DNA of 64,000 nt from Macrostomum lignano (taxonomy: Eukaryota): assembly GCA_002269645.1 (NCBI GenBank), contig NIVC01001049.1, positions 124,001 to 188,000 on the forward strand, given 5' to 3'. Below the pieces are notes generated by a model. It was not told where the DNA came from. It saw nothing but the letters and a program-made list of their open reading frames with translations, and did no database searches. Positions 15,844 through 36,102 of the stretch are shown piece after piece. Position numbers and translations under genes: made by a program. Every line of letters begins with the position of its first letter. The first letter of the stretch is position 1.

Positions 15844-17668
15844 TCAGCGAGTCCAGCAGAGCCGAAGCTCCTCGGCAGACGCTGCAGCCACCGCCGGAGC
15901 CTTCGCAACCGTCAAGGCGGCGTCCTCACCAGCCGTAGTGCCGACTCGGACGGCGAAATTCTTGGCCAGCGCCTGCAGGCACTCGTCACCGCGCCGCCTG
16001 GCTTCGTCTGGGCCTGGCTGGGCCAGCAGCAGCTGCGCGTACAGCCGCCTGAAGTGGCCGCGGCTGCGCAAGCCCGGCCAGATCAGCCGCAGGTCCAGCT
16101 GTGGCGGCGGCGGCGGCGGCGGCGGCGTTGGCGGTGTCCTGGGGGCCTCTAGCTGCAACTGTTGCTGCTCGCGAAGCTGCTGCTGCACCTTCTCTGTAAT
16201 TGCAGCCGGAATCCGTGGGCATTCACACAGTCACTGACCGGAATCCGTGGGCATTCACACAGTCACTGACCGGAATCCGTGGGCATTCACACAGTCACTG
16301 ACCGGAATCCGTGGGCATTCACACAGTCACTGACCGGAATCCGTGGGCATTCACACAGTCACTGACCGGAATCCGTGGGCATTCACACACTGACCGGAAT
16401 CCATGGGCTTTCACACAGTCACTGACCGGAATCCGTGGGCATTCACACACTGACCGGAATCCGTGGGCTTTCACACAGTCACTGACTGGAATCCGTGGAC
16501 ATTCACACAGTCACTGACCGGAATCCGTGGGCATTCACACACTGACTGGAATCCGTGGGCATTCACACAGTCACTGACCGGAATCCGTGGGCATTCACAC
16601 ACTGACCAGAATCCATGGGCATTCACACAGTCACTGACCGGAATCCGTGGGCATTCACACACTGACCGGAATCCGTGGGCTTTCACACAGTCACTGACCG
16701 GAATCCGTGGGCATTCACACACTGACCGGAATCCGTGGGCTTTCACACAGTCACTGACCGGAATCCGTGGGCATTCACACAGTCACTGACCGGAATCCGT
16801 GGGCATTCACACACTGACCGGAATCCGTGGGCTTTCACACAGTCACTGACTGGAATCCGTGGGCATTCACACAGTCACTGACCGGAATCCGTGAGCATTC
16901 ACACACTGACCAGAATCCGTGGGCATTCACACAGTCACTGACCGGAATCCGTGGGCATTCACACACTGACCGGAATCCGTGGGCATTCACACAGTCACTG
17001 ACAGGAATCCGTGGGCATTCACACAGTCACTGATCGGAATCCGTGGGCATTCACACACTGATCAGAATCTGTGGGCATTCACACACTGATCGGAATCTGT
17101 GTGCATTCACACAGTCACTGACCGGAATCCGTGGGCAATCACACAGTCACTGACAGGAATCCGTGGGCAATCACACAGTCACTGACAGGAATCCGTGGGC
17201 ATTCACACAGTCACTGACAGGAATCCGTGGGCATTCACAGAGTCACTGACCGGAATCAGTGGGCATTCACACAGTGGATGAGGATGAGTGTATCAACACA
17301 AGGTGAGCAATCAGCCCCTCTCACTCACTGGACTTGTACTTAATCGCCTGCTCAAAGCCAACCTGCTTGTTCAGCTGGATCTTTCGCATCACAGCCTCCA
17401 GCAGGCGGCTGTCGGCCTCGCGAGTCTCCCGGGCCTGGTCCCGCTGGACCAGCGCCAGCTGCCGCACCTCCGCGGTCTGCCGCCGCAGCCGCTGCTCCGC
17501 CGCCTCCCGCTCCGCCGCCAGCCGCTGCAGCCGCAGCTCCAGCAGCGCATTCTCCTTGTGCCGCCTGGCGCGCTCCTTGTAGAACCGGGACCGCTCGGCC
17601 CGGCTCAGCACCTCCTGGCACCGAGGCAGCTGGCGGCGGCGCGCCTCCGACAATGCTGATGACGTCAT
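15844..17668 (-). CDS. Uncharacterised coiled-coil protein, 2 coding exons (17668-17329, 16193-15844), ~229 aa
   Basis: TTTCAG just upstream of the ATG; donor GTGAGT at 17328; acceptor TACAG at 16194; phase 1 matches; GC-rich codon usage; E/R/Q/L-rich heptad-like segment and a poly-Pro tract. Upstream exons possible. Confidence 0.6.
16207..17277. repeat. 32/28-bp minisatellite (CCGGAATCCGTGGGCATTCACACAGTCACTGA) filling an intron
   Basis: Visible array; the 28-bp variant lacks AGTC. Confidence 0.95.
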
Positions 17669-18511: not shown

Positions 18512-19808
18512 TCCTGAGAATCATTTCTAGTCAGCCCTGAGAATCGTCTGTAGTCAGCCCTGAGAATCGTCTCTAATCAGCCTTGAGAATCATCTCTAAT
18601 CAGCCCTGAGAATCATCTCTAATCAGCCTTGAGAATCATCTCTAATCAGCCTTAAGAATCATCTCTAATCAGCCCTGAGAATCGTCTCTAATCAGCCTTG
18701 AGAATCATCTCTAATCAGCCCTGAGAATCATCTCTAATCAGCCTTGAGAATCATCTCTAATCAGCCTTAAGAATCGTCTCTAATCACCATTGAGAATCAT
18801 CTCTAATCAGCCCTGAGAATCATCTCTAATCAGCCTTAAGAATCGTCTCTAATCAACCCTAAGAATCGTCTCTAATCACCATTGAGAATCGTCTCTAATC
18901 AGCCCTGAGAATCGTCTCTAATCAGCCTTGAGAATCGTCTCTAATCACCATTGAGAATCGTCTCTAATCAGCCCTGAGAATCGTCTCTAATCAGCCTTGA
19001 GAATCGTCTCTAATCACCATTGAGAATCGTCTCTAATCAGCCCTGCGAATCGTCTCTAATCAGCCTTGAGAATCATCTCTAATCAGCCTTGAGAATCGTC
19101 TCTAATCAGCCTTGAGAATCATCTCTAATCAGCCTTGAGAATCGTCTCTAATTAGCCCTGAGAATCATCTCTAATCAGCCTTGAGAATCGTCTCTAATCA
19201 GCCTTGAGAATCGTCTCTAATCAGCATTGAGAATCGTCTCTAATCAGCCTTGAGAATCCTCTCTAATCAGCCTTGAGAATCGTCTCTAATCAGCCTTGAG
19301 AATCGTCTCTAATCAGCCTTGAGAATCGTCTCTAATCAGCCCTAAGAATCATCTCTAATCAGCATTGAGAATCGTCTCTAATCAACCATAAGAATAATCT
19401 CTAATCAGCATTGAGAATCGTCTCTAATCAGCATTGAGAATCGTCTCTAATCAGCCCTGAGAATCGTCTCTAATCAGCCATAAGAATCGTCTTTAATCAG
19501 CATTGAGAATCGTCTCTAATCAGCCCTGAGAATCGTCTCTATTCAGCCCTGAGAATCATCTCTAATCAGCATTGAGAATCGTCTCTAATCACCATTGAGA
19601 ATCGTCTCTAATCAGCCCTAAGAATCATCTCTAGTCAGCCCTAAGAATAATCTCTAATCAGCATTGAGAATCGTCTCTAATCAGCCCTAAGAATCGTCTC
19701 TAATCAGCATTGAGAATCGTCTCTAATCAGCCCTAAGAATCGTCTCTAATCAGCATTGAGAATCGTCTCTAATCAGCCCTAAGAATCGTCTCTAGTCAGC
19801 CCCGAGAA
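18512..19808. repeat. 23-bp minisatellite (GAGAATCGTCTCTAATCAGCCCT)
   Basis: Visible array, over 50 units. Confidence 0.95.
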
Positions 19809-20290: not shown

Positions 20291-23240
<2,950 letters not shown>

Positions 23241-23364
23241 CTGCGTCTGCTGGACCAGTGGGAAAGTTTTCCCCACGCTATTAACAGCTTGAGATGAGCA
23301 AATAACTTTTGTCTGACGCATCTGGAATTTTTTCTTATCTGACCTCTGACCCCCCCCTCGGCGT

Positions 23365-24280
23365 TGGCCCAGCAACTGGGGATCTGGGAGGCTGGCCCAG
23401 CAACTGGGGATCTGGGAGGCTGGCCCAGCAACTGGGGATCTGGGAGGCTGGCCAGCAACTGGGGATCTGGGAGGCTGGCCAGCAACTGAGGATCTGGGAG
23501 GCTGGCCCAGCAACTGGGGATCTGGGAGGCTGGCCCAGCAACTGGGGATCTGGGAGGCTGGCCAGCAACTGGGGATCTGGGAGGCTGGCCCAGCAACTGG
23601 GGATCTGGGAGGCTGGCCAGCAACTGGGGATCTGGGAGGCTGGCCAGCAACTGAGGATCTGAGAGGCTGGCCCAGCAACTGGGGATCTGGGAGGCTGGCC
23701 AGCAACTGAGGATCTGGGAGGCTGGCCAGCAACTGAGGATCTGGGAGGCTGGCCAGCAACTGAGGATCTGGGAGGCTGGCCCAACAACTGGGGATCTGGG
23801 AGGCTGGCCCAATGGCTGGGGATCTGGGAGGCTGGCCCTAACGGCTGGGATCTGGGAGGCTGGCCAGCAACTGAGGATCTGGGAGGCTGGCAAGACAGCT
23901 GGGGATCTGGGAGGCTGGCCCAACGGCTGGGGATCTGGGAGGCTGGCCAGCAACTGGGGATCTGGGAGGCTGGCCAGCAACTGAGGATCTGAGAGGCTGG
24001 CCCAGCAACTGGGATCTGGGAGGCTGGCCAGCAACTGAGGATCTGGGAGGCTGGCCAGCAACTGAGGATCTGGGAGGCTGGCCAGCAACTGAGGATCTGG
24101 GAGGCTGGCCCAACAACTGGGGATCTGGGAGGCTGGCCCAATGGCTGGGGATCTGGGAGGCTGGCCCTAACGGCTGGGGATCTGGGAGGCTGGCCAGCAA
24201 CTGAGGATCTGGGAGGCTGGCAAGACAGCTGGGGATCTGGGAGGCTGGCCCAACGGCTGGGGATCTGGGAGGCTGGCCTA
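23365..24280. repeat. 27/28-bp minisatellite (GGGGATCTGGGAGGCTGGCCCAGCAACT)
   Basis: Visible array. Confidence 0.95.
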
Positions 24281-24904
24281 TTTTCAATTTAGCAGTTAGA
24301 AAAGCTACGCAAACTTCCTTATCTCGCCAGTGCAGTGTATTGAAGCAAATTTTCCCTTCTTTTCGCATGCCCCGCGCTGATCAGCTTGCGGTTCATGGCA
24401 AACGCCAGAGTCAGTGATGAGCAATTGATCTGAGCAAAAGATCGGAGCAATTTTTCAGCAGTAAAATATACATGAAGAGGAACGTACTCAGAAATTCTAC
24501 TGCGAGTAGTTATGTTTAATTTGTCGGCATTCTAAAAGCATTCGGAAGCTTGAGTCTTTTATTTGAGTAGGAGTTTTGCCAGGAAAAATATCCAATATCA
24601 AGTTAGAGACTTAGAGTCCACCAGCTCAGCCTCCCGGCTTCATCCGATACGGCGGCGTCTTAGTCGATTTCAGTTTCCTGAAAGCAGATTGCGTTATACA
24701 TGCATGAAAGGGTTTAGTTCCAAGCAGGATTCCCTATTGGATTGAGATCCCCTACTAAAATTGGGATTCCCTACTAAAATTGGGGTTTGGAGTTTGGAGC
24801 CCCAAAACTAGTTGCCATAGTAACTCGGCGTCAGTGGAAAACGCGGACCCTGGTTCAATTCCGAGCGCGGCCGCATTCATTTGGGGCTTGTCGTGCGATT
24901 TAAA

Positions 24905-25540
24905 CCCGTGAGGGCCAACCCCAGCGCCCGTGGCCCCCATCCCCATCGCCCTTGTCACCACTCGGATCAACCAGTGGGTGGCTTCTAAGCACAGGGAGAG
25001 GTGGGCCAACGCCCCCGACTGCCAGCAATCCCGCGCGGCTGTCCCCTGTCCCTCCTCCGCCCTACGCAGGGCCCTGCTTGGACTCAACCTTAACCGCAGG
25101 GACATCAGGGCGGTGACCATGGCCCTCTCGGGTCATGGCTGCTTTGCCAGGCATCGTTACCTCCAGGAGAAAATCCGCAGTGAGGAATGCCCTTTCTGCC
25201 TCTCCGGTGTCGAGAATGCGGAGCACTTCATCTGTGAATGCCCCGCCTTTACTCAGGACAGGCTCACCTACCTCGGCCCAAACCCGGACCTCTCCGACGT
25301 TTTCAGGCCCGAGAATCTCTGCCAGCTCGTCCGCTACCTAAGGGCTACTGGGCGAGCGAACATCCACCTCCTGGACTCTCCGGAGGGGGACCGCGCTGCG
25401 GACGCCGGCACCACCGGAACTCCCTGCGCGACACCGCAGCACTAGCTGCCCGTGGTCGCCAGGGGTTAGCGAAATGGGCGGCAACGCCTCCTCGCTGTTT
25501 CCGGACGCTGCAGGGAGCCCCCTGCAGCTAAGTCAAGTAA
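24905..25540 (+). mobile_element. 5'-truncated non-LTR retrotransposon 3' end (C-terminal zinc knuckle; I/R1/LOA-group-like)
   Basis: ORF 24930-25445: [42 protein letters not shown] (C-x2-C..E..EH...C.CP), typical of the ORF2 C-terminus after RNase H. Ends near GCTAAGTCAAGTAAG. No RT domain present. Confidence 0.8.
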
Positions 25541-25889: not shown

Positions 25890-26019
25890 TCAGTAGAGCT
25901 CGTAGGTGGTGTGCAGGAGGTCCCGCTCGGACACTTTCTCAACATTGCCCTCCCTGGCCAGCATTCGCTGATTGTAGTCGCGGTACCAGTTCTTCCGCTG
26001 CTCGTGGAGGCCGGAGAAG

Positions 26020-26098
<79 letters not shown>

Positions 26099-28084
26099 GC
26101 TGCTTCTTGAGCTTCTCAGAGTAAGCCGCTACCGCGGCCCCGTCGCCGCCGCCTGCGGGACCTCCGGCCTGCCGCTCGGCGCCGGTGGCGTACAGCACTT
26201 CGCCCGGCTTCCAGTTCACGAACCGGCGCTGCCGACGCTGCGCCGCCCGTCCGCCGGCCTGCGAGGAGTTCGTCACCGTGGCCGCGTCCGCGTCTTCGCC
26301 GTAATAGTCGGCGAAGTCCATCAGCGAGGAGGTGGTGACTGGCTGGATCAGCTCGCCGCCGTCCGGCCGGTAGTGCGGCAGCTGCTCGGAAGGCTGCAGC
26401 AGCAGGCGGTCCGACAGCTCGTCGGGCTGCGGCTCGGCCTGCTGCGCCAGCGCCTGCGGCTGCTGCACCGGCGGCTGCTGCTGCTGCTCAAAGTTCCTGG
26501 CGTACTGGCCGGTGGACCGCGGCTCCAGCTGGGCGTCGCGCAGCCGCACCTCCGAGTAGAACTGGTTGTTGTAGTCATCCGAGCTGATCAGCGCCACCCG
26601 CTCGCCCTCGGGGTTCACCCGGTAGCCGTGGCGCTCCCGCTGGCGCCGCATGGTCTCGCCGTAGCCCGGCGGCTTGCCCGCCCGCTTGTCCAGGCTGTAC
26701 TGGCTGTAGTGCTTCTTGGGCGCGGCCGGGCTGTCCAGCAGGTTCTCCAGCCGGGGCAGCAGGTGGCCGAGGTCGTCGCCGGTCACCAGCTTCGGCTTCG
26801 GGTCGTAGAGCGGCCGCTCCTTCTTGGAGATGGACGACACGTAGGTGGCCGCGGCAGGCGGGTCGGCCTCCGCCACCCGGGGCAGGCGGGTCGGCACCTT
26901 CCGGTTGGACTTCAGCACCAGGCGGCCCTCGCCGTCCATGCGCACCTTCACATCGGCGTCCTCGTGCCAGTCGTGCCGGTAGTTCTCCAGCGGGGCCAGG
27001 ATCAGCGACCGGTTGGTGACGGAGGCCGGGGCCAGCTCGAAGCGCCTGGCGTAGCCCTCGGTCTTGTACAGGTCCTTGGCGCCCCTGCCCGTCTCGGCGC
27101 CGGCCTCGGCCTCCTCCGGCTGCTGCGCCGGCAGCTCCAGCGGCGGCACCGAAGCTGCTTCATCCGTCGGCTTCTTGCCCGCCTTGTCCGCCGCCTTCTT
27201 CTTCTCTGGGGAGGCCTGTCGGGGCTTGTCGAACTCGTGCCTGGCGTACTCCCACTCGTCCGGCTCCCGCTGCGGCTGCTTTTGCTGCGGCGGAGTCTTC
27301 TTCTTCTGCTGCTGCTGCTTCGGCTGTTTTTGCTTCTGCTGAGCCATACCGCCGCCCGGCTTTGCCTCAGCAGCTCCGGCAGATTTTTTATTACCTGCCA
27401 ATTTGGCTTCACCGGATGGCTTTTGTGCGGCCTGTGAATTGTTGCCAGGCTGCTGCCTCTGCTCCCGTTCCCTCTTCTCCTTCTCCCGCTGCTCCTTCTG
27501 CCTCTGCTGCTCCTGCTGCTTCTGCTGCTGCAAATTTTGTTGCTGTTGCCGCTGCTGCTCTCTCTGCTTCTGCTGCTGCTCCTGCTGCTTCTGCTGCTGC
27601 TCCTGCTGTTGTCGCTGCCGCTGCTCTCGCCTCTCCTTCTCTTCCTGCAGCTGCTGCTGGCGCCGCTTCCTGTCCGCCGCCGCCGCCTCGGCCGCTGGAT
27701 CGGCCTGCTTTGGGTCCCGCTCGTTCGGCAGCCGGCGATGTCGCGTGGCCGCCGGCTTGGCCGCCGCTTCGGCTGCCGTCCGCTGCGCGAACTCTCGCTG
27801 CCGTTCGCGCAAGGCCGCCCGCTGGCCCGCCTCCTCGCTGTTGGCTCGCCGCTGCTGCCGCCGCTGCTGCCCGCGGCCGTCCCCGTCTTGCCGCTGCGCC
27901 CGCTGCTCCACCTCCTCCGCGTATTCCCGCCTGGACTCGAAGCCGCCACCTCTGCCGAGGTCCCCGGAGCCGCGGCGCAGCCTCGGCCGGTTGCTGTCGT
28001 GCTCCAGCCAGGGCAGCCGCTCGTGGTACACCTTCCAGGGGTTCGGGGTCGCGGAGTCGAAGTGTGGAAGATTTGAAGAAGAAG
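25890..28084 (-). CDS. Large terminal exon encoding a ~713+ aa Q/R/E-rich low-complexity protein with ~24-Q tract; probably the last exon of the tau-like gene
   Basis: 2.1-kb open frame with strongly GC-biased third positions; stop at 25890. Acceptor position uncertain (28085 or 28032). No recognisable globular domain. Confidence 0.75.
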
Positions 28085-28599
28085 CTTGACGGATGGGGCA
28101 TAAAGCACGCTCTCAAGGAGCCCTTTGAACCACAGCATGCAGTGCCGACCTCTCCCCAAACCCTAATTTTAATAGGCCGGGGTTTTTCAGTTCACACACA
28201 GCTGATTGCATCAAATTTCTACTTTTATGGGGGGCGCATTTTACATGTGATATGGAGATTTTTATTCAGCAAAAACTGCCACAATCTGCCGTGTGTGAAC
28301 TGAAAAGGTTACAGCATTCATATTGTGTGCATAGAGTGCGCGGGATTGACTTCTGTGCTCAGAGTTTGACTCATGCGGTTGCCCACATCCGGGGTCCTTA
28401 ATCCTCCACTCAATCCAGTTGCTAGGAGGAGGACTCAGGCTTACCAGCAACGGAAGGCGGCAGTCGGGACAGCTGTCTGAGCACTGCTGATTGTGCAGCG
28501 GGGCAGGACGGATGCTCTATTCAGAAACTTTACAATTACATGACAATGGCAAACACCCCAGGGTCTCGCCTGCGACCTCCGTGAGTCAGACTTGAAACT

Positions 28600-29437
28600 G
28601 TGTGCCTGTGTGATTAAGCTGTATGTAGTGTGCCTGTGTGATTAAGCTGTATGTAGTGTGCCTGTGTGATTAAGCTGTCTGTAGTGTGCCTGTGTGATTA
28701 AGCTGTATGTAGTGTGCCTGTGTGATTAAGCTGTATGTAGTGTGCCTGTGTGATTAAGCTGTCTGTAGTGTGCCTGGGGGATTAAGCTGTCTGTAGTGTG
28801 CCTGGGTGATTAAGCTGTCTGTAGTGTGCCTGTGTGATTAAGCTGTATGTAGTGTGCCTGTGTGATTAAGCTGTATGTAGTGTGCCTGTGTGATTAAGCT
28901 GTCTGTAGTGTGCCTGGGTGATTAAGCTGTATGTAGTGTGCCTGTGTGATTAAGCTGTATGTAGTGTGCCTGTGTGATTAAGCTGTCTGTAGTGTGCCTG
29001 TGTGATTAAGCTGTATGTAGTGTGCCTGTGTGATTAAGCTGTATGTAGTGTGCCTGTGTGATTAAGCTGTATGTAGTGTGCCTGTGTGATTAAGCTGTAT
29101 GTAGTGTGCCTGTGTGATTAAGCTGTATGTAGTGTGCCTGGGTGATTAAGCTGTATGTAGTGTGCCTGTGTGATTAAGCTGTATGTAGTGTGCCTGTGTG
29201 ATTAAGCTGTCTGTAGTGTGCCTGTGTGATTAAGCTGTATGTAGTGTGCCTGTGTGATTAAGCTGTATGTAGTGTGCCTGTGTGATTAAGCTGTATGTAG
29301 TGTGCCTGTGTGATTAAGCTGTCTGTAGTGTGCCTGTGTGATTAAGCTGTATGTAGTGTGCCTGTGTGATTAAGCTGTCTGTAGTGTGCCTGTGTGATTA
29401 AGCTGTCTGTAGTGTGTCTGCATGATTAAGCTGTGGT
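28600..29437. repeat. 28-bp minisatellite (GTGTGCCTGTGTGATTAAGCTGTATGTA)
   Basis: Visible array, ~30 units. Confidence 0.95.
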
Positions 29438-29527
29438 GTGCCTGTTCCTCAAAACAAAACTCCTTCCCTCAGTTTCACTGCTCACTGCATCCCGGATGCA
29501 TCCCTAGATCCCGGATCTCCAACTCAC

Positions 29528-32500
29528 TCGAATTCCAGGCCGCCTGGGCTCGTAGTCCTTGTTCTCCAGAGATCTGACCTTTGGCTGCGCCCTGTCCGTG
29601 AAGTCCAGCTGGTCGTTGAAAATCTGAGTTTTTTGGTAGGCATTTAGGAAGGAGAAAAATAAGATTCTGAACTATTTCCAGGATACAAGTGAATGGAAAC
29701 TGGTAAATCAATGTGTTATTTTAGTTAGCGGCACAGCAAAACGCGGGTGTTGTTCGAAACTTGGCTGGCTGGTGAGAGTGGCCAAAGAAACTCTCGAGTC
29801 ACAGAAGCGCCAAAGACTGCATAGGGTGAAAAATATTGTCAGAATTATTGGCAAACAGGGAGAAGCAACTTGTGAGAAGGTGCAAAGCGTCAGGGCTGAG
29901 GGCTACCGAACCCAGGGCTGGCGCGGTCCGCACGCCTCACCCGCGTTTTGGACGGCCGGCTCTGGTAGTCGATGTTCTCCCTGGTGTTCAGGGCCGGCTT
30001 GTCCGTCCATCGAAGCCGCTCGCTGTACACAAACTGCCATCGAGCAGTCGAGAGGGAACAATGCGTTGGTAAAACACTGTCACGTAACTCAAGTTCTCAT
30101 TACGACATTTATTCGGGTTATTTACGATTTTTCGCGGGTTTTCTACGAAACCAATGATTTCAAAAAAAGACAAGGTTTTCCGTCAAATAAGTTCCGAGTT
30201 TTCCGGGAAACAAATACGTTTAGGAAGAGATTTTTTTAAAGCCATTTGTTCACTCAGTTTTCTAGCAATTATTTAATTTAAATACACGAATGCTTTTCTT
30301 AAAATGACTTCAAAACAGCAGAAACTTTTCCGGGTTTTGCAAAAATAAGTTCACGAATAAGTTTGAAGGGCATTTTCCCAACGACCTCGAATACTAAATA
30401 ATCTTAAGTTCGCAAAAACGCCAGGCCATTCGAAAGGCGTTGTTGCCCACCCTGTCAGCGAGCTGTCTGCACCCTCGATCGAGATTTTCTGTGTCCGGTA
30501 AAGTAATCACAAAAAAAAATGTTTTCTTTCTCACTACGCTACAATTAAAAGGAATTGGCTACACGATCTACTGCGAAACACAACAACTACATAAAAAAAT
30601 ATAACGCACAGGGAACTAATGAGCAAACGTATTAGTTTTTGCTACTTCTGGTTTTTATAATAATTTAAATTACAGTTATTTGGTTGGCCCAGTCACCGGG
30701 TTATTAATTTTCTATCAATTGTTGCTATGGTAACACTCTTTAAAAATAATTATGGTGATTATTAACAACTAAAAACGGAACTCCTATTCATCGTGTTATT
30801 GTGTTTATCTATATCTACTGGATAGAAATCAAATCAAGAGTTCTACTCCGCTATAAGTAGTATGCATGGGGGTGTACTTTTTTGTCACCCCCGCCGGGCT
30901 TGTGGGTGGCGTTGTCCAAGGAGCCGATCTTGGAGTGCGCGTGCCACTGGACCGCTTCCTGGAACACCTGACAGCCGCCGCGAGAGTTTGTTGAATATCA
31001 GGGACTGAACAGCTCGTTCAAACTGAATGTTTTTGATTAGACTAAGCAGGAAATCAATCAAAGCCTGCTTTGATATAAAAATAAAACTTAAACATTAAAA
31101 AAAGCATTCCAATCTTCACCTTTTTGTCGCCTCCGCTGGGCCTGTACTCCGCATTCTCCAGCGAGCCAATCTTCGGCTTGGCCTCCTTCTGAAATTGCAG
31201 CCGCTCGTTGAAGATGGGCTTGTTGCCGCCGCCTGCCAGGTTGAGTTTTGGAGGGTTGAAAATCTAGCTGGAATCGCAGTCGAATGTACATGCTAACTCT
31301 GCCTCTTCCGGGCCTCCAGGGTCTATCACGAGAAAGCAGTAAACAAGTGTACAGTAAATCTTGAATTTCCTTCCCTTTTAAAAGTACATTCCAGCTCTGT
31401 CCTTTTCAGCCCTATCCCACCGACCCTACCGTTAGCTAGCAGTAAACAAGTGTACAGTAAATCTTGAATTTCCTTCCCTTTTAAACGTACATTCCAGCTC
31501 TGTCCTTTCCAGCCCTATCCCACCGACCCTACCGTTAGCTAGCAGTAAACAAGTGTACAGTAAATCTTGAATTTCCTTCCCTTTTAAACGTACATTTTAG
31601 CTCTGTCCTTTTCAGCCCTATCCCACCGACCCTACCGTCAGCTGGCAGTAAACAAGTGTACAGTAAATCTTGAATTTCCTTCCCTTTTAAATGTACATTC
31701 CAGCTCTGTCCTTTTCAGCCCTATCCCACCGACCCTACCGTTAGCTAGCAGTAAACAAGTGTACAGTAAATCTTGAATTTCCTTCCCTTTTAAATGTACA
31801 TTCCAGCTCTGTCCTTTTCAGCCCTATCCCACCGACCCTACCGTTAGCTAGCAGTAAACAAGTGTACAGTAAATCTTGAATTTCTTTCCCTTTTAAATGT
31901 ACATTCCAGCTCTGTCCTTTTCAGCCCTATCCCACCGACCCTACCGTTAGCTAGCAGTAAACAAGTGTACAGTAAATCTTGAATTTCCTTCCCTTTTAAA
32001 AGTACATTCCAGCTCTGTCCTTTTCAGCCCTATCCCACCGACCCTACCGTTAGCTAGCAGTAAACAAGTGTACAGTAAATCTTGAATTTCCTTCCCTTTT
32101 AAATGTACATTCCAGCTCTGTCCTTTTCAGCCCTATCCCACCGACCCTACCGTTAGCTAGCAGTAAACAAGTGTACAGTAAATCTTGAATTTCCTTCCCT
32201 TTTAAATGTACATTCCAGCTCTGTCCTTTTTCAGCCCTATCCCACCGACCCTACCGTTAGCTAGCAGTAAACAAGTGTACAGTAAATCTTGAATTTCCTT
32301 CCCTTTTAAATGTACATTCCAGCTCTGTCCTTTCCAGCCCTATCCCACCGACCCAACCGTTAGCTAGCAGTAAACAAGTGTACAGTAAATCTTGAATTTC
32401 CTTCCCTTTTAAACGTACATTCCAGCTCTGTCCTTTTTCAGCCCTATCCCACCGACCCTACCGTTAGCTAGCAGTAAACAAGTGTACAGTAAATCTTGAA

Positions 32501-33696
32501 TTTCCTTCCCTTTTAAAAGTACATTCCAGCTCTGTCCTTTTCAGCCCTATCCCACCGACCCTACCGTTAGCTAGCAGTAAACAAGTGTACAGTAAATCTT
32601 GAATTTCCTTCCCTTTTAAAAGTACATTCCAGCTCTGTCCTTTTCAGCCCTATCCCACCGACCCTACCGTTAGCTAGCAGTAAACAAGTGTACAGTAAAT
32701 CTTGAATTTCCTTCCCTTTTATATGTACATTCCAGCTCTGTCCTTTTCAGCCCTATCCCACCGACCCTACCGTTAGCTAGCAGTAAACAAGTGTACAGTA
32801 AATCTTGAATTTCTTTCCCTTTTAAATGTACATTCCAGCTCTGTCCTTTTCAGCCCTATCCCACCGACAATACCGTTAGGTAGCAGTAAACAAGTGTGCA
32901 TTAAATATTGAATTTCCTTCCCTATCAAATGTACATGCCAACCCATTTCTAACCTTTAGCCAAGGACTACTCAAGTAGGACGGGATCGGGAAACTACGTT
33001 TCTTAGAAAATGTTAAGGAGGCTGATTTTCGCCGAAAAATGCACCACGGAGATAGGAAGTTTTCACTTTTTCATTTTAAAATTGTTATTGCCTTCGATAG
33101 GAGACAGAACCAATGCTCATCTTTTGATATGTTTTGCCTTTCTTATAGCTCTACTGATATTCGTGGAGCTTTTCGTTCAGAAAATTAGGATTCTATTCTA
33201 TTCTATTAGGAATTTTATTCTCCGGCACGGCTCGGCGCATTGGTTTTATGAATCTATTCTGTCATTCTTAGCTGACTGTGTAACAATATGTGTAGCAATT
33301 ATGATAAAATAGATTCATAAAACCAATGAGTCGAGCTGTGCCATGAATTTTATTATTTAGGTAGAGATGTCCGTAAAATAAAAATTGACATAGAATTCAA
33401 ATTTTCTAAACGAACTACTCTTTTCCCACCAGCCATAACTCACCTGGTTGGTAGTCCTGGTTCTCCAGCGATTTAATCTTGCTCTCAGTCTGAAATTCCA
33501 CTTTTTCGTGGAAAATCTTTCTCTGAAATGACAACAAAACGATGTTTAGCTTCGAATTTAACGATTTCTTTTCAAAAGCATTTCAATTTATGCACCATGA
33601 TAAATTTTTAGCTAGCTTACACTCCCTCCTCCAGGCTTGTAATCCTCATTGTAGGCATCCACCTTGGGCTGGATCTCCTCACCTCGGGGGTGACCC
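29528..33696 (-). CDS. Tau/MAP2/MAP4-family microtubule-binding-repeat protein; micro-exons 33696-33621, 33522-33444, 31232-31120, 30967-30878, 30033-29941, 29623-29528
   Basis: Spliced translation: ..IQPKVDAYNEDYKPGGGS|RKIFHEKVEFQTESKIKSLENQDYQPG|GGNKPIFNERLQFQKEAKPKIGSLENAEYRPSGGDKK|VFQEAVQWHAHSKIGSLDNATHKPGGGDKK|FVYSERLRWTDKPALNTRENIDYQSRPSKTR|IFNDQLDFTDRAQPKVRSLENKDYEPRRPGIR. Contains the canonical SKIGSLDN.TH.PGGG motif; GT-AG sites with consistent phases. Confidence 0.88.
31336..32930. repeat. 103-bp satellite-like tandem repeat, ~15 copies, intronic in the tau-like gene
   Basis: Unit GCAGTAAACAAGTGTACAGTAAATCTTGAATTTCC...CTACCGTTAGCTA recurs at 31336, 31439 and onward. Confidence 0.95.
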
Positions 33697-33911
33697 CTGC
33701 AAGGAAGGCAGATACGGTTCTTTGTTGGAAGTCCTGGTAAGACTTTAGAGCAGTCTCAAAGCTCCTATTAGGGTCATTTAGTTTATCATGACAATTGAAC
33801 TGATATCAGATTTGATAAATATTCCAGCGTACACTCGTATACACTTAAAAAGTGACAAATTAGGCCGAAATGGCAACATGAGAGTTGCCATTTTGAATTT
33901 GGGACTCTCAC

Positions 33912-35745
33912 CAGGGTCTGACAGCATGAGAGTCCCAAATACAGGGTCTGACAGCATGAGAGTCCCAAATACAGGGTCTGACAGCATGAGAGTCTCAAAT
34001 ACCAGGGTCTGACAGCATGAGAGTCCTAAATTCCAGGGTCTGACAGCATGAGAGTCCCAAATACAGGGTCTGACAGCATGAGAGTCCCAAATACAGGGTC
34101 TGACAGCATGAGAGTCCAAATACCAGGGTCTGACAGCATGAGAGTCCTAAATTCCAGGGTCTGACAGCATGAGAGTCCTAAATTCCAGGGTCTGACAGCA
34201 TGAGAGTCCTAAATTCCAGGGTCTGACAGCATGAGAGTCCTAAATTCCAGGGTCTGACAGCATGAGAGTCCTAAATTCCAGGGTCTGACAGCATGAGAGT
34301 CCCAAATACAGGGTCTGACAGCATGAGAGTCCCAAATACAGGGTCTGACAGCATGAGAGTCCCAAATACCAGGGTCTGACAGCATGAGAGTCCTAAATTC
34401 CAGGGTCTGACAGCATGAGAGTCCTAAATTCCAGGGTCTGACAGCATGAGAGTCCTAAATTCCAGGGTCTGACAGCATGAGAGTCCTAAATTCCAGGGTC
34501 TGATAGCATGAGAGTACCAAATACAGGGTCTGACAGCATGAGAGTCCTAAATTCCAGGGTCTGACAGCATGAGAGTCTCGAATGTCACAGTCTGACAGCA
34601 TGAGAGTCCCAAATACAGGGTCTGACAGCATGAGAGTACCAAATACAGGGTCTGACAGCATGAGAGTCTCGAATGTCACAGTCTGACAGCATGAGAGTCC
34701 TAAATTCCAGGGTCTGACAGCATGAGAGTCTCGAATGTCACAGTCTGACAGCATGAGAGTCCCAAATACAGGGTCTGACAGCATGAGAGTACCAAATACA
34801 GGGTCTGACAGCATGAGAGTCTCGAATATCACAGTCTGACAGCATGAGAGTCCTAAATTCCAGGGTCTGACAGCATGAGAGTCTCGAATGTCACAGTCTG
34901 ACAGCATGAGAGTCTCGAATGTCACAGTCTGACCGCATTAGAGTCTCGAATGTCACAGTCTGACAGCATGAGAGTCCCAAATACAGGGTCTGACAGCATG
35001 AGAGTACCAAATACAGGGTCTGACAGCATGAGAGTCCCAAATTCCAGGGTCTGACAGCATGAGAGTCTCGAATGTCACAGTCTGACAGCATGAGAGTCTC
35101 GAATGTCACAGTCTGACAGCATGAGAGTACCAAATACAGGGTCTGACAGCATGAGGGTCCTAAATTCCAGGGTCTGACAGCATGAGAGTCTCGAATGTCA
35201 CAGTCTGACAGCATGAGAGTCCTAAATTCCAGGGTCTGACAGCATGAGAGTCTCGAATGTCACAGTCTGACAGCATGAGAGTCTCGAATGTCACAGTCTG
35301 ACAGCATGAGAGTCTCGAATGTCACAGTCTGACAGCATGAGAGTCTCGAATGTCACAGTCTGACAGCATGAGAGTCCCAAATACAGGGTCTGACAGCATG
35401 AGAGTCCCAAATTCCAGGGTCTGACAGCATGAGAGTCCCGAATGTCACAGTCTGACAGCATGAGAGTCCCAAATGCCAGGGTCTGACACAGCAGGGGAGT
35501 CCCGAATGTCACAGTCTGACAGCATGAGAGTACCAAATACAGGGTCTGACAGCATGAGAGTCCCAAATTCCAGGGTCTGACAGCATGAGAGTCCCGAATG
35601 TCACAGTCTGACAGCATGAGAGTCCCAAATGCCAGGGTCTGACACAGCAGGGCAGTCCCGAATGTCACAGTCTATCAGCCTGAGAGTCCCAAATTCCAGG
35701 GTCTGACAGCATGAGAGTCCCAAATGCCAGGGTCTGACACAGCAG
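33912..35745. repeat. ~30-bp minisatellite with constant GTCTGACAGCATGAGAGT core and several alternative spacer variants
   Basis: Visible; variants CCCAAATACAGG, CCTAAATTCCAGG, CTCGAATGTCACA. Confidence 0.95.
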
Positions 35746-35936
35746 GGGAGTCCCAGATTCCCAGATCCCTGGGTCCCGCAGCGCCCCAGATCCCCAGATC
35801 CCAGAGTCCCGCAGCGCCCCAGATCCTCAGATCCCAGGGTCCCGCAGCGCCCCAGATCCTCAGATCCCAAGGTCCCGCAGCGCCCCAGATCCCCAGCTCG
35901 GTCCCCGAAGTCCCCAGAGCCGCCGCGGTGCCTCAC

Positions 35937-36102
35937 AGTCGGCAGGCAGGCCGATGCGCATTCGCTGCCTCGGCGTGTCCTCCTCCTCGGCCATGATCTC
36001 CGGGATCGTCCTTCCGAACTCGTCGAAGCTTCTGAACTCTCTCCGCCTGAGCTGCTCCTCAGCTCTCAGCCTGCTCAGCGCTCGGGAGCGCCGCTCGGCC
36101 AT
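35937..36102 (-). CDS. Candidate first coding exon of the tau-like gene (MAERRSRALSRLRAEEQL...)
   Basis: ATG in GC-rich ORF, donor GTGAGG at 35936. Phase 1 does not match the 33696 exon (phase 2), so a missing exon or 1-nt error is needed. Confidence 0.45.

What the first reader, a model, noticed from the sequence alone, without database searches (positions are those of the whole stretch)
29528..33696. Hidden tau/MAP2-like gene: 5-6 microtubule-binding repeats in micro-exons absent from the ORF track
Seen: six minus-strand exons of 76-113 nt splice in frame into tandem 30-33-aa repeats, including SKIGSLDNATHKPGGG and PKIGSLENAEYRPSGG; three consecutive exons are 90, 93 and 96 nt, one repeat each. 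Established: the tau/MAP2/MAP4/PTL-1 repeat is 31-32 aa ending in PGGG, and a 93-nt in-frame repeat exon is alternatively spliced in vertebrate tau. Here five full repeats plus a partial one are present, two lack PGGG, and phase-0 exons could be skipped freely. Inference: a divergent invertebrate tau with modular isoforms.
Basis: partly seen in the sequence, partly recalled or inferred. Interest (0 to 1): 0.75.

Follow-up and report, generated by a model that had tools for sequence, protein, structure and literature searches.

The report
Flatworm tau/MAP2-family gene in small exons
This is the flatworm Macrostomum lignano's ordinary copy of the tau/MAP2/MAP4 microtubule-binding protein gene, split into one-repeat exons as in snails and fish; public databases already hold partial, mislabelled models of it.

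Summary
Six minus-strand exons of 76, 79, 113, 90, 93 and 96 nt, all AG...GT, splice in frame into a 182-aa peptide that hits Pfam PF00418 (Tubulin-binding) at E = 3.5e-39.

- **Organism and prior annotation:** the window is Macrostomum lignano. The locus matches GenBank contig NIVC01001342.1 except for small indels. Two partial models already exist: PAA69194.1 ("hypothetical protein") and UniProt A0A1I8HWX5 (misnamed "BUD13 homolog").
- **Repeat count:** three repeats pass Pfam's threshold alone (E2, E3, E4). E6 is weaker and E1 is partial. E5 is not recognisable statistically.
- **Exon structure:** three intron positions and phases match a snail gene and an eel tau gene, so the small-exon layout is ancestral.
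- **Isoforms:** modular splicing is only indirectly supported. The two database models skip E4, or E4 and E5, and E4 has a weak donor.
- **Extensions beyond the finding:**
  - A 5' exon at 35937-36102.
  - A probable 2,142-nt last exon at 25890-28031, encoding a 713-aa tail with no homolog that is predicted to be mostly disordered. It could instead be a separate trans-spliced gene.
- **Frame problem:** the window has C5 where other copies have C6, at 33686-33690. As written, this puts the start codon out of frame with the repeats.

An ordinary family member, of low interest.

The parts
35937..36102 (-). E0, the first coding exon. It runs from the ATG (MAERRSRALS...RMRIGLPAD) to the donor T|gtgagg, phase 1. 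The exon may begin further upstream, at or before 36150.
   Evidence: tblastn of P0001 gives 96% identity over 36150-35923. Sequence and donor were read, coordinates. An in-frame TAG lies directly upstream of GCCAATCGG.
33621..33696 (-). E1, 76 nt. Encodes a partial repeat, ...PRGEEIQPKVDAYNEDYKPGGGS, and ends in phase 0 after GGGS.
   Evidence: Family-HMM hit at E = 3.9e-3. No Pfam hit on its own.
33686..33690 (-). C5 homopolymer inside E1. The same locus in GenBank (L001) has C6, and P0001 and P0025 (WVTPRGEE) imply C6. With C5, the E0 reading frame is shifted relative to the repeats.
   Evidence: Alignment. Translating the splice as written gives a stop at residue 189, in E5. An alternative acceptor at 33682 would restore the frame.
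33444..33522 (-). E2, 79 nt, phase 0 to 1. Encodes repeat RKIFHEKVEFQTESKIKSLENQDYQP(G).
   Evidence: Pfam 37.7 bits on its own. The intron position matches the 82-nt exons of the snail and eel genes.
31120..31232 (-). E3, 113 nt, phase 1 to 0. Encodes (G)GGNKPIFNERLQFQKEAKPKIGSLENAEYRPSGGDKK.
   Evidence: Pfam 38.7 bits. Corresponds to the 107-nt exons of the snail and eel genes.
30878..30967 (-). E4, 90 nt, phase 0 to 0. Encodes the most canonical repeat, VFQEAVQWHAHSKIGSLDNATHKPGGGDKK. Its donor GTACAC is weak, and it is a candidate cassette exon.
   Evidence: Pfam 46.2 bits. Family HMM 2e-15. Absent from both database models.
29941..30033 (-). E5, 93 nt, phase 0 to 0. Encodes a degenerate repeat, FVYSERLRWTDKPALNTRENIDYQSRPSKTR.
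   Evidence: CAG acceptor, GTGAGG donor and third-codon-position GC content (GC3) of 0.87. The RNA-seq-derived model P0025 uses its acceptor. There is no significant repeat signal.
29504..29623 (-). E6, 96 nt (29528-29623), repeat IFNDQLDFTDRAQPKVRSLENKDYEPRRPGIR, with a GTGAGT donor. Also covers the 24-nt read-through VSWRSGI-TAG (stop at 29504-29506) that ends model P0001.
   Evidence: Pfam 18.7 bits, E = 0.0016.
25890..28031 (-). E7, probable terminal exon. It is 713 codons plus TGA, has an AAG|GTG acceptor in phase 0, and starts VYHERLPWLEHDSN. The tail is rich in Q, E, R and K, has no homolog, and is predicted to be mostly disordered.
   Evidence: ORF. GC by codon position is 0.74/0.43/0.89. 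GC3 steps from about 0.5 to 1.0 exactly at 28031 and drops after the stop. No Pfam hit and no homolog. AlphaFold2 mean confidence (pLDDT) is 47.8. Its link to E6 is inferred.
28261..28266 (-). AATAAA between E6 and E7. A possible poly(A) signal for a short isoform ending after E6.
33910..35896 (.). Tandem arrays filling the E0-E1 intron: 31 bp x 60 and 33 bp x 4.4.
31335..32940 (.). 103-bp satellite, 15.6 copies, in the E2-E3 intron.
28600..29434 (.). 28-bp satellite, 29.8 copies, between E6 and E7.

Best explanation
**What it is.** The region holds the Macrostomum lignano member of the tau/MAP2/MAP4 family of microtubule-associated proteins. It belongs to the non-vertebrate type, like PTL-1 or Drosophila tau.

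**Gene layout.**
- A short 5' exon (E0) encodes 55 residues from the ATG.
- Six small exons (E1-E6) follow, each carrying one repeat or most of one. The repeats are 30-34 aa and have the form [IV][FY]xE[RK]Lx[FW]...K[IV]xSLxNxxYxPGGG.

**How it works (inferred by homology).** The tandem repeats lie along the microtubule lattice and bind tubulin. The number of repeats sets the affinity.

**Isoforms (inferred).** E4, E5 and E6 are phase-0 exons, and E4 has a weak donor. Repeat number is therefore probably varied by exon skipping, as in vertebrate tau exon 10 and C. elegans PTL-1A/B. My estimate that this happens is about 0.6.

**3' end (inferred).** The E6 donor is probably spliced, at least in some transcripts, to a 2.1-kb terminal exon (E7). 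E7 adds a 713-aa tail that has no homolog and is predicted to be mostly disordered. My estimate for this is also about 0.6. A short isoform would end at a TAG 21 nt past E6.

**Frame.** The 1-nt C5-versus-C6 discrepancy in E1 is most likely an assembly error in the window.
For: **Shown**
- Exon coordinates and splice sites.
- PF00418 at E = 3.5e-39, with E2, E3 and E4 each above Pfam's 27-bit cut-off alone.
- A window-wide six-frame scan with a family HMM finds only these exons.
- The best solved-structure match is human tau at 7e-22. The best database hits are tau/MAP proteins of insects, crustaceans, molluscs and nematodes at 34-50% identity.
- The species is M. lignano, and the locus equals GenBank NIVC01001342.1 apart from indels.
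- Three intron positions and phases are shared with Bulinus truncatus and an eel tau gene: after PGGG+1 (phase 0), inside KPG|GG (phase 1), and after GG-x-KK (phase 0). Both of those genes also carry phase-0 repeat exons (90 nt in the snail, 93 nt in the eel) that their annotated models skip.

**Isoforms**
- P0025 comes from a StringTie/TACO/TransDecoder annotation and joins E3 to E5. P0001 joins E3 to E6.
- The E4 donor GTACAC departs from the species consensus GT[G/A]AG.

**E7**
- GC3 steps from about 0.5 to 1.0 exactly at the acceptor and falls after the stop.
- There is no in-frame ATG for 236 codons.
- It is phase-0 compatible with the consensus GTGAGT donor of E6.
- It opens with the repeat-start motif. 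P0118 has IVNERLPWLKYNKPNL right after its last repeat.

**C6**
- L001 has C6, and both database proteins read WVTPRGEE.
Against: - No RNA reads were examined. Every junction, and all exon skipping, is inferred from sequence and from two database models. One of those models is frameshifted, and the evidence type behind the other is unknown.
- As written, the window does not encode the protein from the E0 ATG: it frameshifts and stops in E5.
- E5 has no statistically detectable repeat signal.
- Against E7 belonging to this gene:
  - It has an unusual AAG acceptor.
  - An AATAAA lies 230 nt upstream of it.
  - It is not annotated in GenBank.
  - P0001 terminates before it.
  - Its match to the repeat-start motif is not significant window-wide (2.7 bits, E = 3.7).
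- The N-terminal region is only 55 aa and has no proline-rich domain. This is unlike classical tau/MAP2/MAP4.
Confidence: 0.9

Rival explanations
1. The tau-like gene ends just after E6, at TAG 29504-29506, with a 3' UTR running through the 28-bp satellite to the AATAAA at 28261-28266. E7 is then a separate downstream gene of the same polycistronic transcriptional unit. It would be spliced-leader (SL) trans-spliced at 28031 and take its start codon from the leader, which ends in ATG.
For: - P0001 ends with the read-through VSWRSGI-stop.
- An AATAAA lies 230 nt upstream of the E7 acceptor.
- The M. lignano SL is ...TTGCATG. About 30% of genes are trans-spliced and 15% lie in operons, with intergenic distances near 100 bp once repeats are discounted.
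- The GenBank locus name ends in 'g2', which is my reading of the naming scheme for a gene cut out of a multi-gene transcriptional unit.
- TransDecoder chose a 124-aa CDS for that transcript, which is unlikely if the transcript contained the much longer E7 ORF.
Against: - E6 ends in a perfect GTGAGT donor exactly at the repeat boundary.
- The E7 acceptor is AAG, not the YTNCAG enriched at trans-splice sites.
- E7 opens with the family's repeat-start motif, and P0118 has a near-identical motif right after its last repeat.
- No gene is annotated at E7 in GenBank either.
Confidence: 0.35
2. The window copy is a decaying duplicate, that is a pseudogene. The 1-nt deletion in E1 (C5) is real and uncouples the start codon from the repeats.
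For: - C5 in the window versus C6 in L001, with a premature stop at residue 189 when spliced as written.
- The M. lignano DV1 genome carries large, nearly identical duplicated blocks.
Against: - Across roughly 9 kb the window and L001 differ by about 6 substitutions. All other exon differences are 1-nt indels, plus a 3-nt GCA insertion in E0 and a 24-nt poly-Q length change in E7, as expected from assembly error in one locus.
- All seven downstream exons keep open frames, consensus splice sites and GC3 of 0.6-0.98.
- An in-frame alternative acceptor exists at 33682.
Confidence: 0.08
3. E5 is not an exon. It is a chance open AG...GT segment in the E4-E6 intron, so the gene has one repeat fewer.
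For: No Pfam or family-HMM hit, and a leave-one-out score of 6 bits at E = 1.1. No database protein contains its in-frame translation.
Against: - The RNA-seq-derived GenBank model uses exactly the E5 acceptor, spliced from the E3 donor.
- It has a CAG acceptor and a GTGAGG donor, a length of 93 nt in phase 0, and GC3 of 0.87, like the neighbouring exons.
- It ranks first among non-member fragments in the leave-one-out search.
Confidence: 0.15

Closest known systems
Non-vertebrate tau/MAP2/MAP4 homologs (C. elegans PTL-1, Drosophila and other arthropod tau, mollusc MAPs)
   Same: - Tandem PF00418 repeats with the K[IV]GSL-N-x-H/Y-x-PGGG core, 34-50% identical over the repeat region.
- Four to seven repeats.
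- Repeat number varied by splicing: PTL-1A has five repeats and PTL-1B four (PMC4155875).
- The snail gene has the same exon boundaries plus 90-nt phase-0 repeat exons.
- Platyhelminth homologs are already placed in the non-vertebrate clade (PMC4815063).
   Different: - The N-terminus is very short (55 aa) with no proline-rich region.
- The last two or three repeats have lost PGGG.
- The arthropod C-terminal KIFDDKDYL motif is absent.
- There may be a 713-aa tail with no homolog after the repeats, instead of a long N-terminal projection domain.
Vertebrate MAPT (tau)
   Same: - It is the best match among solved structures (E = 7e-22).
- In the eel locus the intron positions and phases around the repeats are identical: 82-nt and 107-nt exons, against 79 and 113 nt here.
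- Phase-0 93-nt cassette repeat exons are present. Exon 10 adds 93 bp in human tau (PMC13164133).
- Teleosts reach 5-7 repeats by duplicating a phase-0 exon (PMC4815063).
   Different: - It is not an ortholog of MAPT specifically. Non-vertebrate proteins form an outgroup to MAP4/MAP2/MAPT (PMC4815063).
- The repeats contain no Cys.
- There is no N-terminal projection or proline-rich domain.
- The C-terminal region is unrelated.

Membership tests
tau/MAP2/MAP4 family (Pfam PF00418, Tubulin-binding repeat) | Three or more tandem 31-32-aa repeats matching PF00418 above the curated threshold | tested here: met
   The whole peptide scores 132.8 bits against a 27-bit cut-off, in 4 stretches. E2, E3 and E4 score 37.7, 38.7 and 46.2 bits alone, and E6 scores 18.7 bits. 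The independent family HMM agrees.
tau/MAP2/MAP4 family (Pfam PF00418, Tubulin-binding repeat) | Closest relatives in sequence searches are recognised family members | tested here: met
   202 hits at E <= 1e-5. Every one of the 120 listed carries PF00418, and those with names are tau or MAP proteins. All 44 matches among solved structures are tau.
tau/MAP2/MAP4 family (Pfam PF00418, Tubulin-binding repeat) | Family-typical exon structure of the repeat region: introns after PGGG+1 (phase 0), inside PG|GG (phase 1) and after GG-x-KK (phase 0), plus phase-0 single-repeat exons | tested here: met
   All three boundaries and phases are shared with Bulinus truncatus (L002) and an eel tau gene (L003).
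tau/MAP2/MAP4 family (Pfam PF00418, Tubulin-binding repeat) | Typical architecture: a long N-terminal projection or proline-rich region, with the repeats near the C-terminus. This is typical of the family, not strictly defining. | tested here: inconclusive
   Only 55 codons lie between the first ATG and the repeats, and an in-frame TAG precedes E0. Further upstream exons cannot be excluded, because P0001 starts at an AG boundary without a Met. If E7 is joined, the long extension is C-terminal.
tau/MAP2/MAP4 family (Pfam PF00418, Tubulin-binding repeat) | Binds microtubules and promotes their assembly | not testable with these tools
   Needs co-sedimentation and assembly assays with recombinant protein.
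Vertebrate MAPT (tau proper) | Falls inside the MAPT clade rather than the non-vertebrate outgroup | not tested
   No phylogeny was run here. The literature places Platyhelminth homologs in a non-vertebrate outgroup (PMC4815063), so 'tau-like' is a description and not a claim of orthology.

The most novel reading that the evidence does not exclude
**Proposed reading.** M. lignano makes a tau-family protein with an inverted layout. It has a minimal 55-aa N-terminus, six to seven one-exon repeats, and then a 713-aa glutamine- and charge-rich, largely disordered tail. That tail has no homolog among 1.8-5.8 billion database proteins, so it would be a lineage-specific projection domain on the C-terminal side.

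**Regulation.** An alternative 3' end would switch between this long form and a repeat-only 'mini-tau' of 180-240 aa. The switch is between splicing at the E6 donor and read-through followed by polyadenylation.
Probability: 0.45. Interest if true: 0.4.

Novelty: new member of a known kind. Interest (0 to 1): 0.2.

Why it matters
It matters mainly as annotation repair. The public M. lignano models of this gene are truncated, frameshifted or misnamed, and none includes the best-conserved repeat (E4).

The conserved intron positions across flatworm, snail and fish add a data point. They suggest that the one-repeat-per-exon design, and the variation of repeat number by exon skipping, are ancestral to bilaterian tau-family genes.

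M. lignano is transgenic-tractable. A compact tau-family gene with cassette repeats could serve as a simple in vivo system for studying repeat-number effects. That is a modest gain and does not open a new kind of biology.

Tried and rejected
- **Homologs of the E7 tail.**
  - The whole ORF gave 8000 low-complexity candidates and no hit.
  - The non-repetitive 201 aa gave no hit.
  - A full HMMER scan of 1.84 billion representatives with 386 aa gave no hit.
  - Pfam also gave no hit.
  - So no function can be assigned by homology.
- **Structure of the E7 tail.** Single-sequence AlphaFold2 gave a mean pLDDT of 47.8, with only a helix through the poly-Q run confident. No fold search was worthwhile.
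- **DNA of the second copy (P0001).** Not on record. Loci for P0005 and P0032 were also unavailable. A Ka/Ks test of E4, E5 and E7 between paralogs was therefore impossible.
- **L001 as a comparison.** It turned out to be the same locus with about 0.07% substitutions, so it says nothing about selection.
- **BUD13.** The UniProt name was tested and rejected. P0001 and the E0 peptide give no Bud13 hit.
- **Further repeat exons.** None exist elsewhere in the window.
- **Neighbouring long ORFs.** Pfam scans gave only low-complexity noise.
- **Literature.**
  - No paper mentions Mlig015027 or a Macrostomum tau.
  - The paper describing the assembly behind P0001 was not in the library, so the evidence type of that model stays unknown.
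- **E7 starting with a seventh repeat.** Only the 8-residue start motif matches, at 2.7 bits, and it is not significant window-wide.
Full report
**1. The observation**

Reading the minus strand of 29300-33900 and locating the exons by script confirms six segments:

| Exon | Coordinates | Length (nt) |
|---|---|---|
| E1 | 33621-33696 | 76 |
| E2 | 33444-33522 | 79 |
| E3 | 31120-31232 | 113 |
| E4 | 30878-30967 | 90 |
| E5 | 29941-30033 | 93 |
| E6 | 29528-29623 | 96 |

Each follows a CAG acceptor and precedes a GT donor.

**2. More than chance**

- The peptide matches Pfam PF00418 (Tau and MAP protein, tubulin-binding repeat) at E = 3.5e-39 and 132.8 bits against a 27-bit cut-off, in four stretches.
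- All 44 matches among solved structures are tau, the best at 6.8e-22.
- I built an HMM from 454 repeat instances of 118 non-Macrostomum homologs and ran it over every stop-free fragment of all six frames of the 64-kb window.
  - It hits E4 (2e-15), E3 (9e-12), E2 (1e-6), E6 (3e-4) and E1 (4e-3).
  - Nothing else scores below E = 1.2.
- Scanned one at a time against Pfam:
  - E2, E3 and E4 pass the curated threshold alone, at 37.7, 38.7 and 46.2 bits.
  - E6 is sub-threshold at 18.7 bits, E = 0.0016.
  - E1 (partial) and E5 give nothing.
- In a leave-one-out test against its sister repeats, E5 scores 6 bits at E = 1.1. It ranks first among non-members but is not significant.
- The defensible count is therefore four recognisable full repeats, one partial repeat and one degenerate candidate.

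**3. Organism and existing annotation**

The two best database hits are Macrostomum lignano proteins:

- **P0025** = PAA69194.1 / A0A267F7L0, 'hypothetical protein BOX15_Mlig015027g2', 124 aa, 98% identical.
- **P0001** = A0A1I8HWX5, 200 aa, named 'BUD13 homolog' in UniRef.

P0025 lies on GenBank contig NIVC01001342.1 of assembly GCA_002269645.1 (locus L001). Across about 9 kb, L001 and the window differ by about six substitutions plus 1-nt indels, one 3-nt indel and one 24-nt poly-Q length change. They are the same locus, or a near-identical copy of it.

The BUD13 name has no support. P0001 hits only PF00418.

The GenBank annotation of this assembly was made from RNA-seq transcript assemblies (StringTie/TACO plus a de novo transcriptome), with CDS called by TransDecoder (PMC5730564). 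The exon junctions of P0025 therefore reflect an assembled transcript.

**4. The gene is larger than the finding**

*Upstream exon (E0).*
- tblastn of P0001 finds an exon at 36150-35923.
- It reads ATG (36102) MAERRSRALS...MAEEEDTPRQRMRIGLPAD and ends T|gtgagg at 35937, in phase 1.
- An in-frame TAG sits immediately upstream. The N-terminal region is therefore only 55 codons, unless undetected exons splice in there.

*Downstream exon (E7).*
- A 713-codon ORF lies at 25890-28031.
- GC by codon position is 0.74/0.43/0.89.
- In 20-codon windows, third-codon-position GC content (GC3) steps from about 0.5 to 1.0 exactly at 28031, directly after an AAG acceptor with a pyrimidine-rich tract. It stays at 0.7-1.0 in all but one 20-codon window (0.3 at codons 200-219) and falls to 0.35 after the TGA.
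- It has no in-frame ATG for 236 codons.
- It is therefore a coding exon that needs an upstream partner in phase 0. The donors of E3, E4, E5 and E6 are all phase 0, and E6 ends in a consensus GTGAGT.
- It opens VYHERLPW, which is the same [IV][FY]xE[RK]Lx[FW] start as every repeat exon. One homolog, P0118, reads ...PGGGNVKIVNERLPWLKYNKPNL right after its last repeat.
- The rest of E7 has no Pfam domain and no homolog in any search.
- Single-sequence AlphaFold2 predicts it to be mostly disordered, with a mean pLDDT of 47.8.

**5. Is E7 really part of this gene?**

This is inferred, not shown. Evidence against:
- P0001 stops at a TAG 21 nt past E6 by reading through the donor.
- An AATAAA lies at 28261-28266, 230 nt upstream of the E7 acceptor.
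- GenBank has no CDS over E7.
- TransDecoder chose a 124-aa ORF for the annotated transcript.
- M. lignano trans-splices about 30% of its genes with a leader that ends in ATG, and it has operons with short intergenic distances (PMC8629364). E7 could be a separate trans-spliced gene that borrows the leader's AUG.

Evidence for:
- the E6 donor;
- the repeat-start motif;
- the non-consensus (AAG, not YTNCAG) acceptor.

I put about 0.6 on E7 being spliced to the repeat exons in at least some transcripts, and about 0.35 on the separate-gene reading.

**6. A frame problem in the window**

- E0 ends in phase 1. With the canonical E1 acceptor, the window's run of five C (33686-33690) puts E0 out of frame with the repeats. 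The spliced sequence as written stops at residue 189, inside E5.
- L001 has six C, and both database proteins read WVTPRGEE, which requires six.
- L001's own errors are deletions. One of them falls inside E3 and truncates P0025.
- The simplest explanation is a homopolymer error in the window.
- A real frameshift (pseudogene) is a minor rival.
- An in-frame alternative acceptor at 33682 also exists.

**7. Exon structure is ancestral**

I fetched two other family loci and mapped their exons.

*Bulinus truncatus (L002)*
- One exon ends ...PGGGN| in phase 0.
- The next is 82 nt and ends ...KPG| in phase 1.
- The next is 107 nt and ends ...SGGDKK| in phase 0.
- Three 90-nt phase-0 single-repeat exons follow. 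The annotated model P0052 skips them.

*Eel tau gene (L003)*
- It shows the same three boundaries, with 82-nt and 107-nt exons.
- It has two 93-nt phase-0 repeat exons that its model P0093 skips.

The flatworm's 79/113-nt pair and its 90/93/96-nt phase-0 exons fit this pattern exactly.

*Literature*
- Exon 10 adds 93 bp in human tau (PMC13164133).
- Teleosts reach 5-7 repeats by duplicating a phase-0 repeat exon. Platyhelminth homologs belong to a non-vertebrate outgroup (PMC4815063).
- Molluscs have expanded repeat numbers (PMC8985376).
- C. elegans PTL-1A and PTL-1B have five and four repeats (PMC4155875).

**8. Isoforms**

- E4, E5 and E6 can each be skipped in frame.
- P0025 joins the E3 donor to the E5 acceptor. 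P0001 joins E3 to E6.
- No database protein contains E4 or E5 at high identity.
- Yet E4 is the most canonical repeat, so it must be under selection and expressed somewhere.
- Its donor GTACAC departs from the species consensus GT[G/A]AG, as expected for a cassette exon.
- This is suggestive, and it is not a test. Junction reads are needed.

**9. Mechanism**

- By homology, the tandem repeats bind along tubulin protofilaments. Repeat number sets affinity, and splicing would vary it.
- This is inferred from the family. Nothing here tests binding.
- The short N-terminus, and the possible long disordered C-terminal tail, would be an unusual arrangement for the family.

**10. Verdict**

- This is a real, ordinary member of a well-known family in a species where it is already partly, and poorly, annotated.
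The claims of being hidden, and of five full repeats, are overstated.
- The only unusual element is the orphan E7 exon, whose attachment to the gene is unproven.

Noticed in passing
window 25890-28031 (-): A 713-codon ORF whose third-codon-position GC content rises to 0.9-1.0 exactly at its acceptor. It has no in-frame ATG for 236 codons, no homolog in any database searched, and no GenBank CDS. It is either the last exon of the tau-like gene or an unannotated trans-spliced gene.
   Followed up: partly
window 33686-33690: A C5 run where the GenBank copy of the locus has C6. As written, the window puts the start codon out of frame with the repeats. Probably a homopolymer assembly error.
   Followed up: partly
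window 28600-29434, 31335-32940, 33910-35896: Every large intron of this gene is filled by a tandem array: 28 bp x 30, 103 bp x 15.6, 31 bp x 60 and 33 bp x 4.4.
   Followed up: no
L001 (GenBank NIVC01001342.1), E3 at about 5770 and E0 at 1157-1402: [quoted passage not shown] The E3 deletion truncates the annotated CDS PAA69194.1 into a frameshifted 124-aa product.
   Followed up: yes
P0001 (UniProt A0A1I8HWX5): The UniRef name 'BUD13 homolog' is unsupported. The protein hits only PF00418.
   Followed up: yes
P0078 (Phlyctochytrium arcticum, a chytrid fungus): A 318-aa protein with several good tau-type repeats (E = 2.9e-24) is annotated from a fungus. This means either tau-type repeats outside animals or contamination of that assembly.
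   Followed up: no
L002 14274-14363, about 17286-17375, about 19586-19675, and 31408-31935: The snail Bulinus truncatus tau-like locus has three 90-nt phase-0 repeat exons and a multi-repeat exon that the annotated model P0052 does not use.
   Followed up: partly
L003 2439-2531 and 4748-4840: The eel tau locus has two 93-nt exon-10-like repeat exons that the annotated 156-aa model does not use.
   Followed up: partly
window 24930-25445 (+): A 171-aa ORF with a CPFC...HFICECP Cys/His motif, reminiscent of the C-terminus of non-LTR retrotransposon ORF2 proteins. It gives no Pfam hit.
   Followed up: no
window 22900-24400 and much of 39000-63000: Many long ORFs on both strands are translations of GC-rich tandem or low-complexity repeats. 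Pfam returns only low-complexity noise for them.
   Followed up: partly
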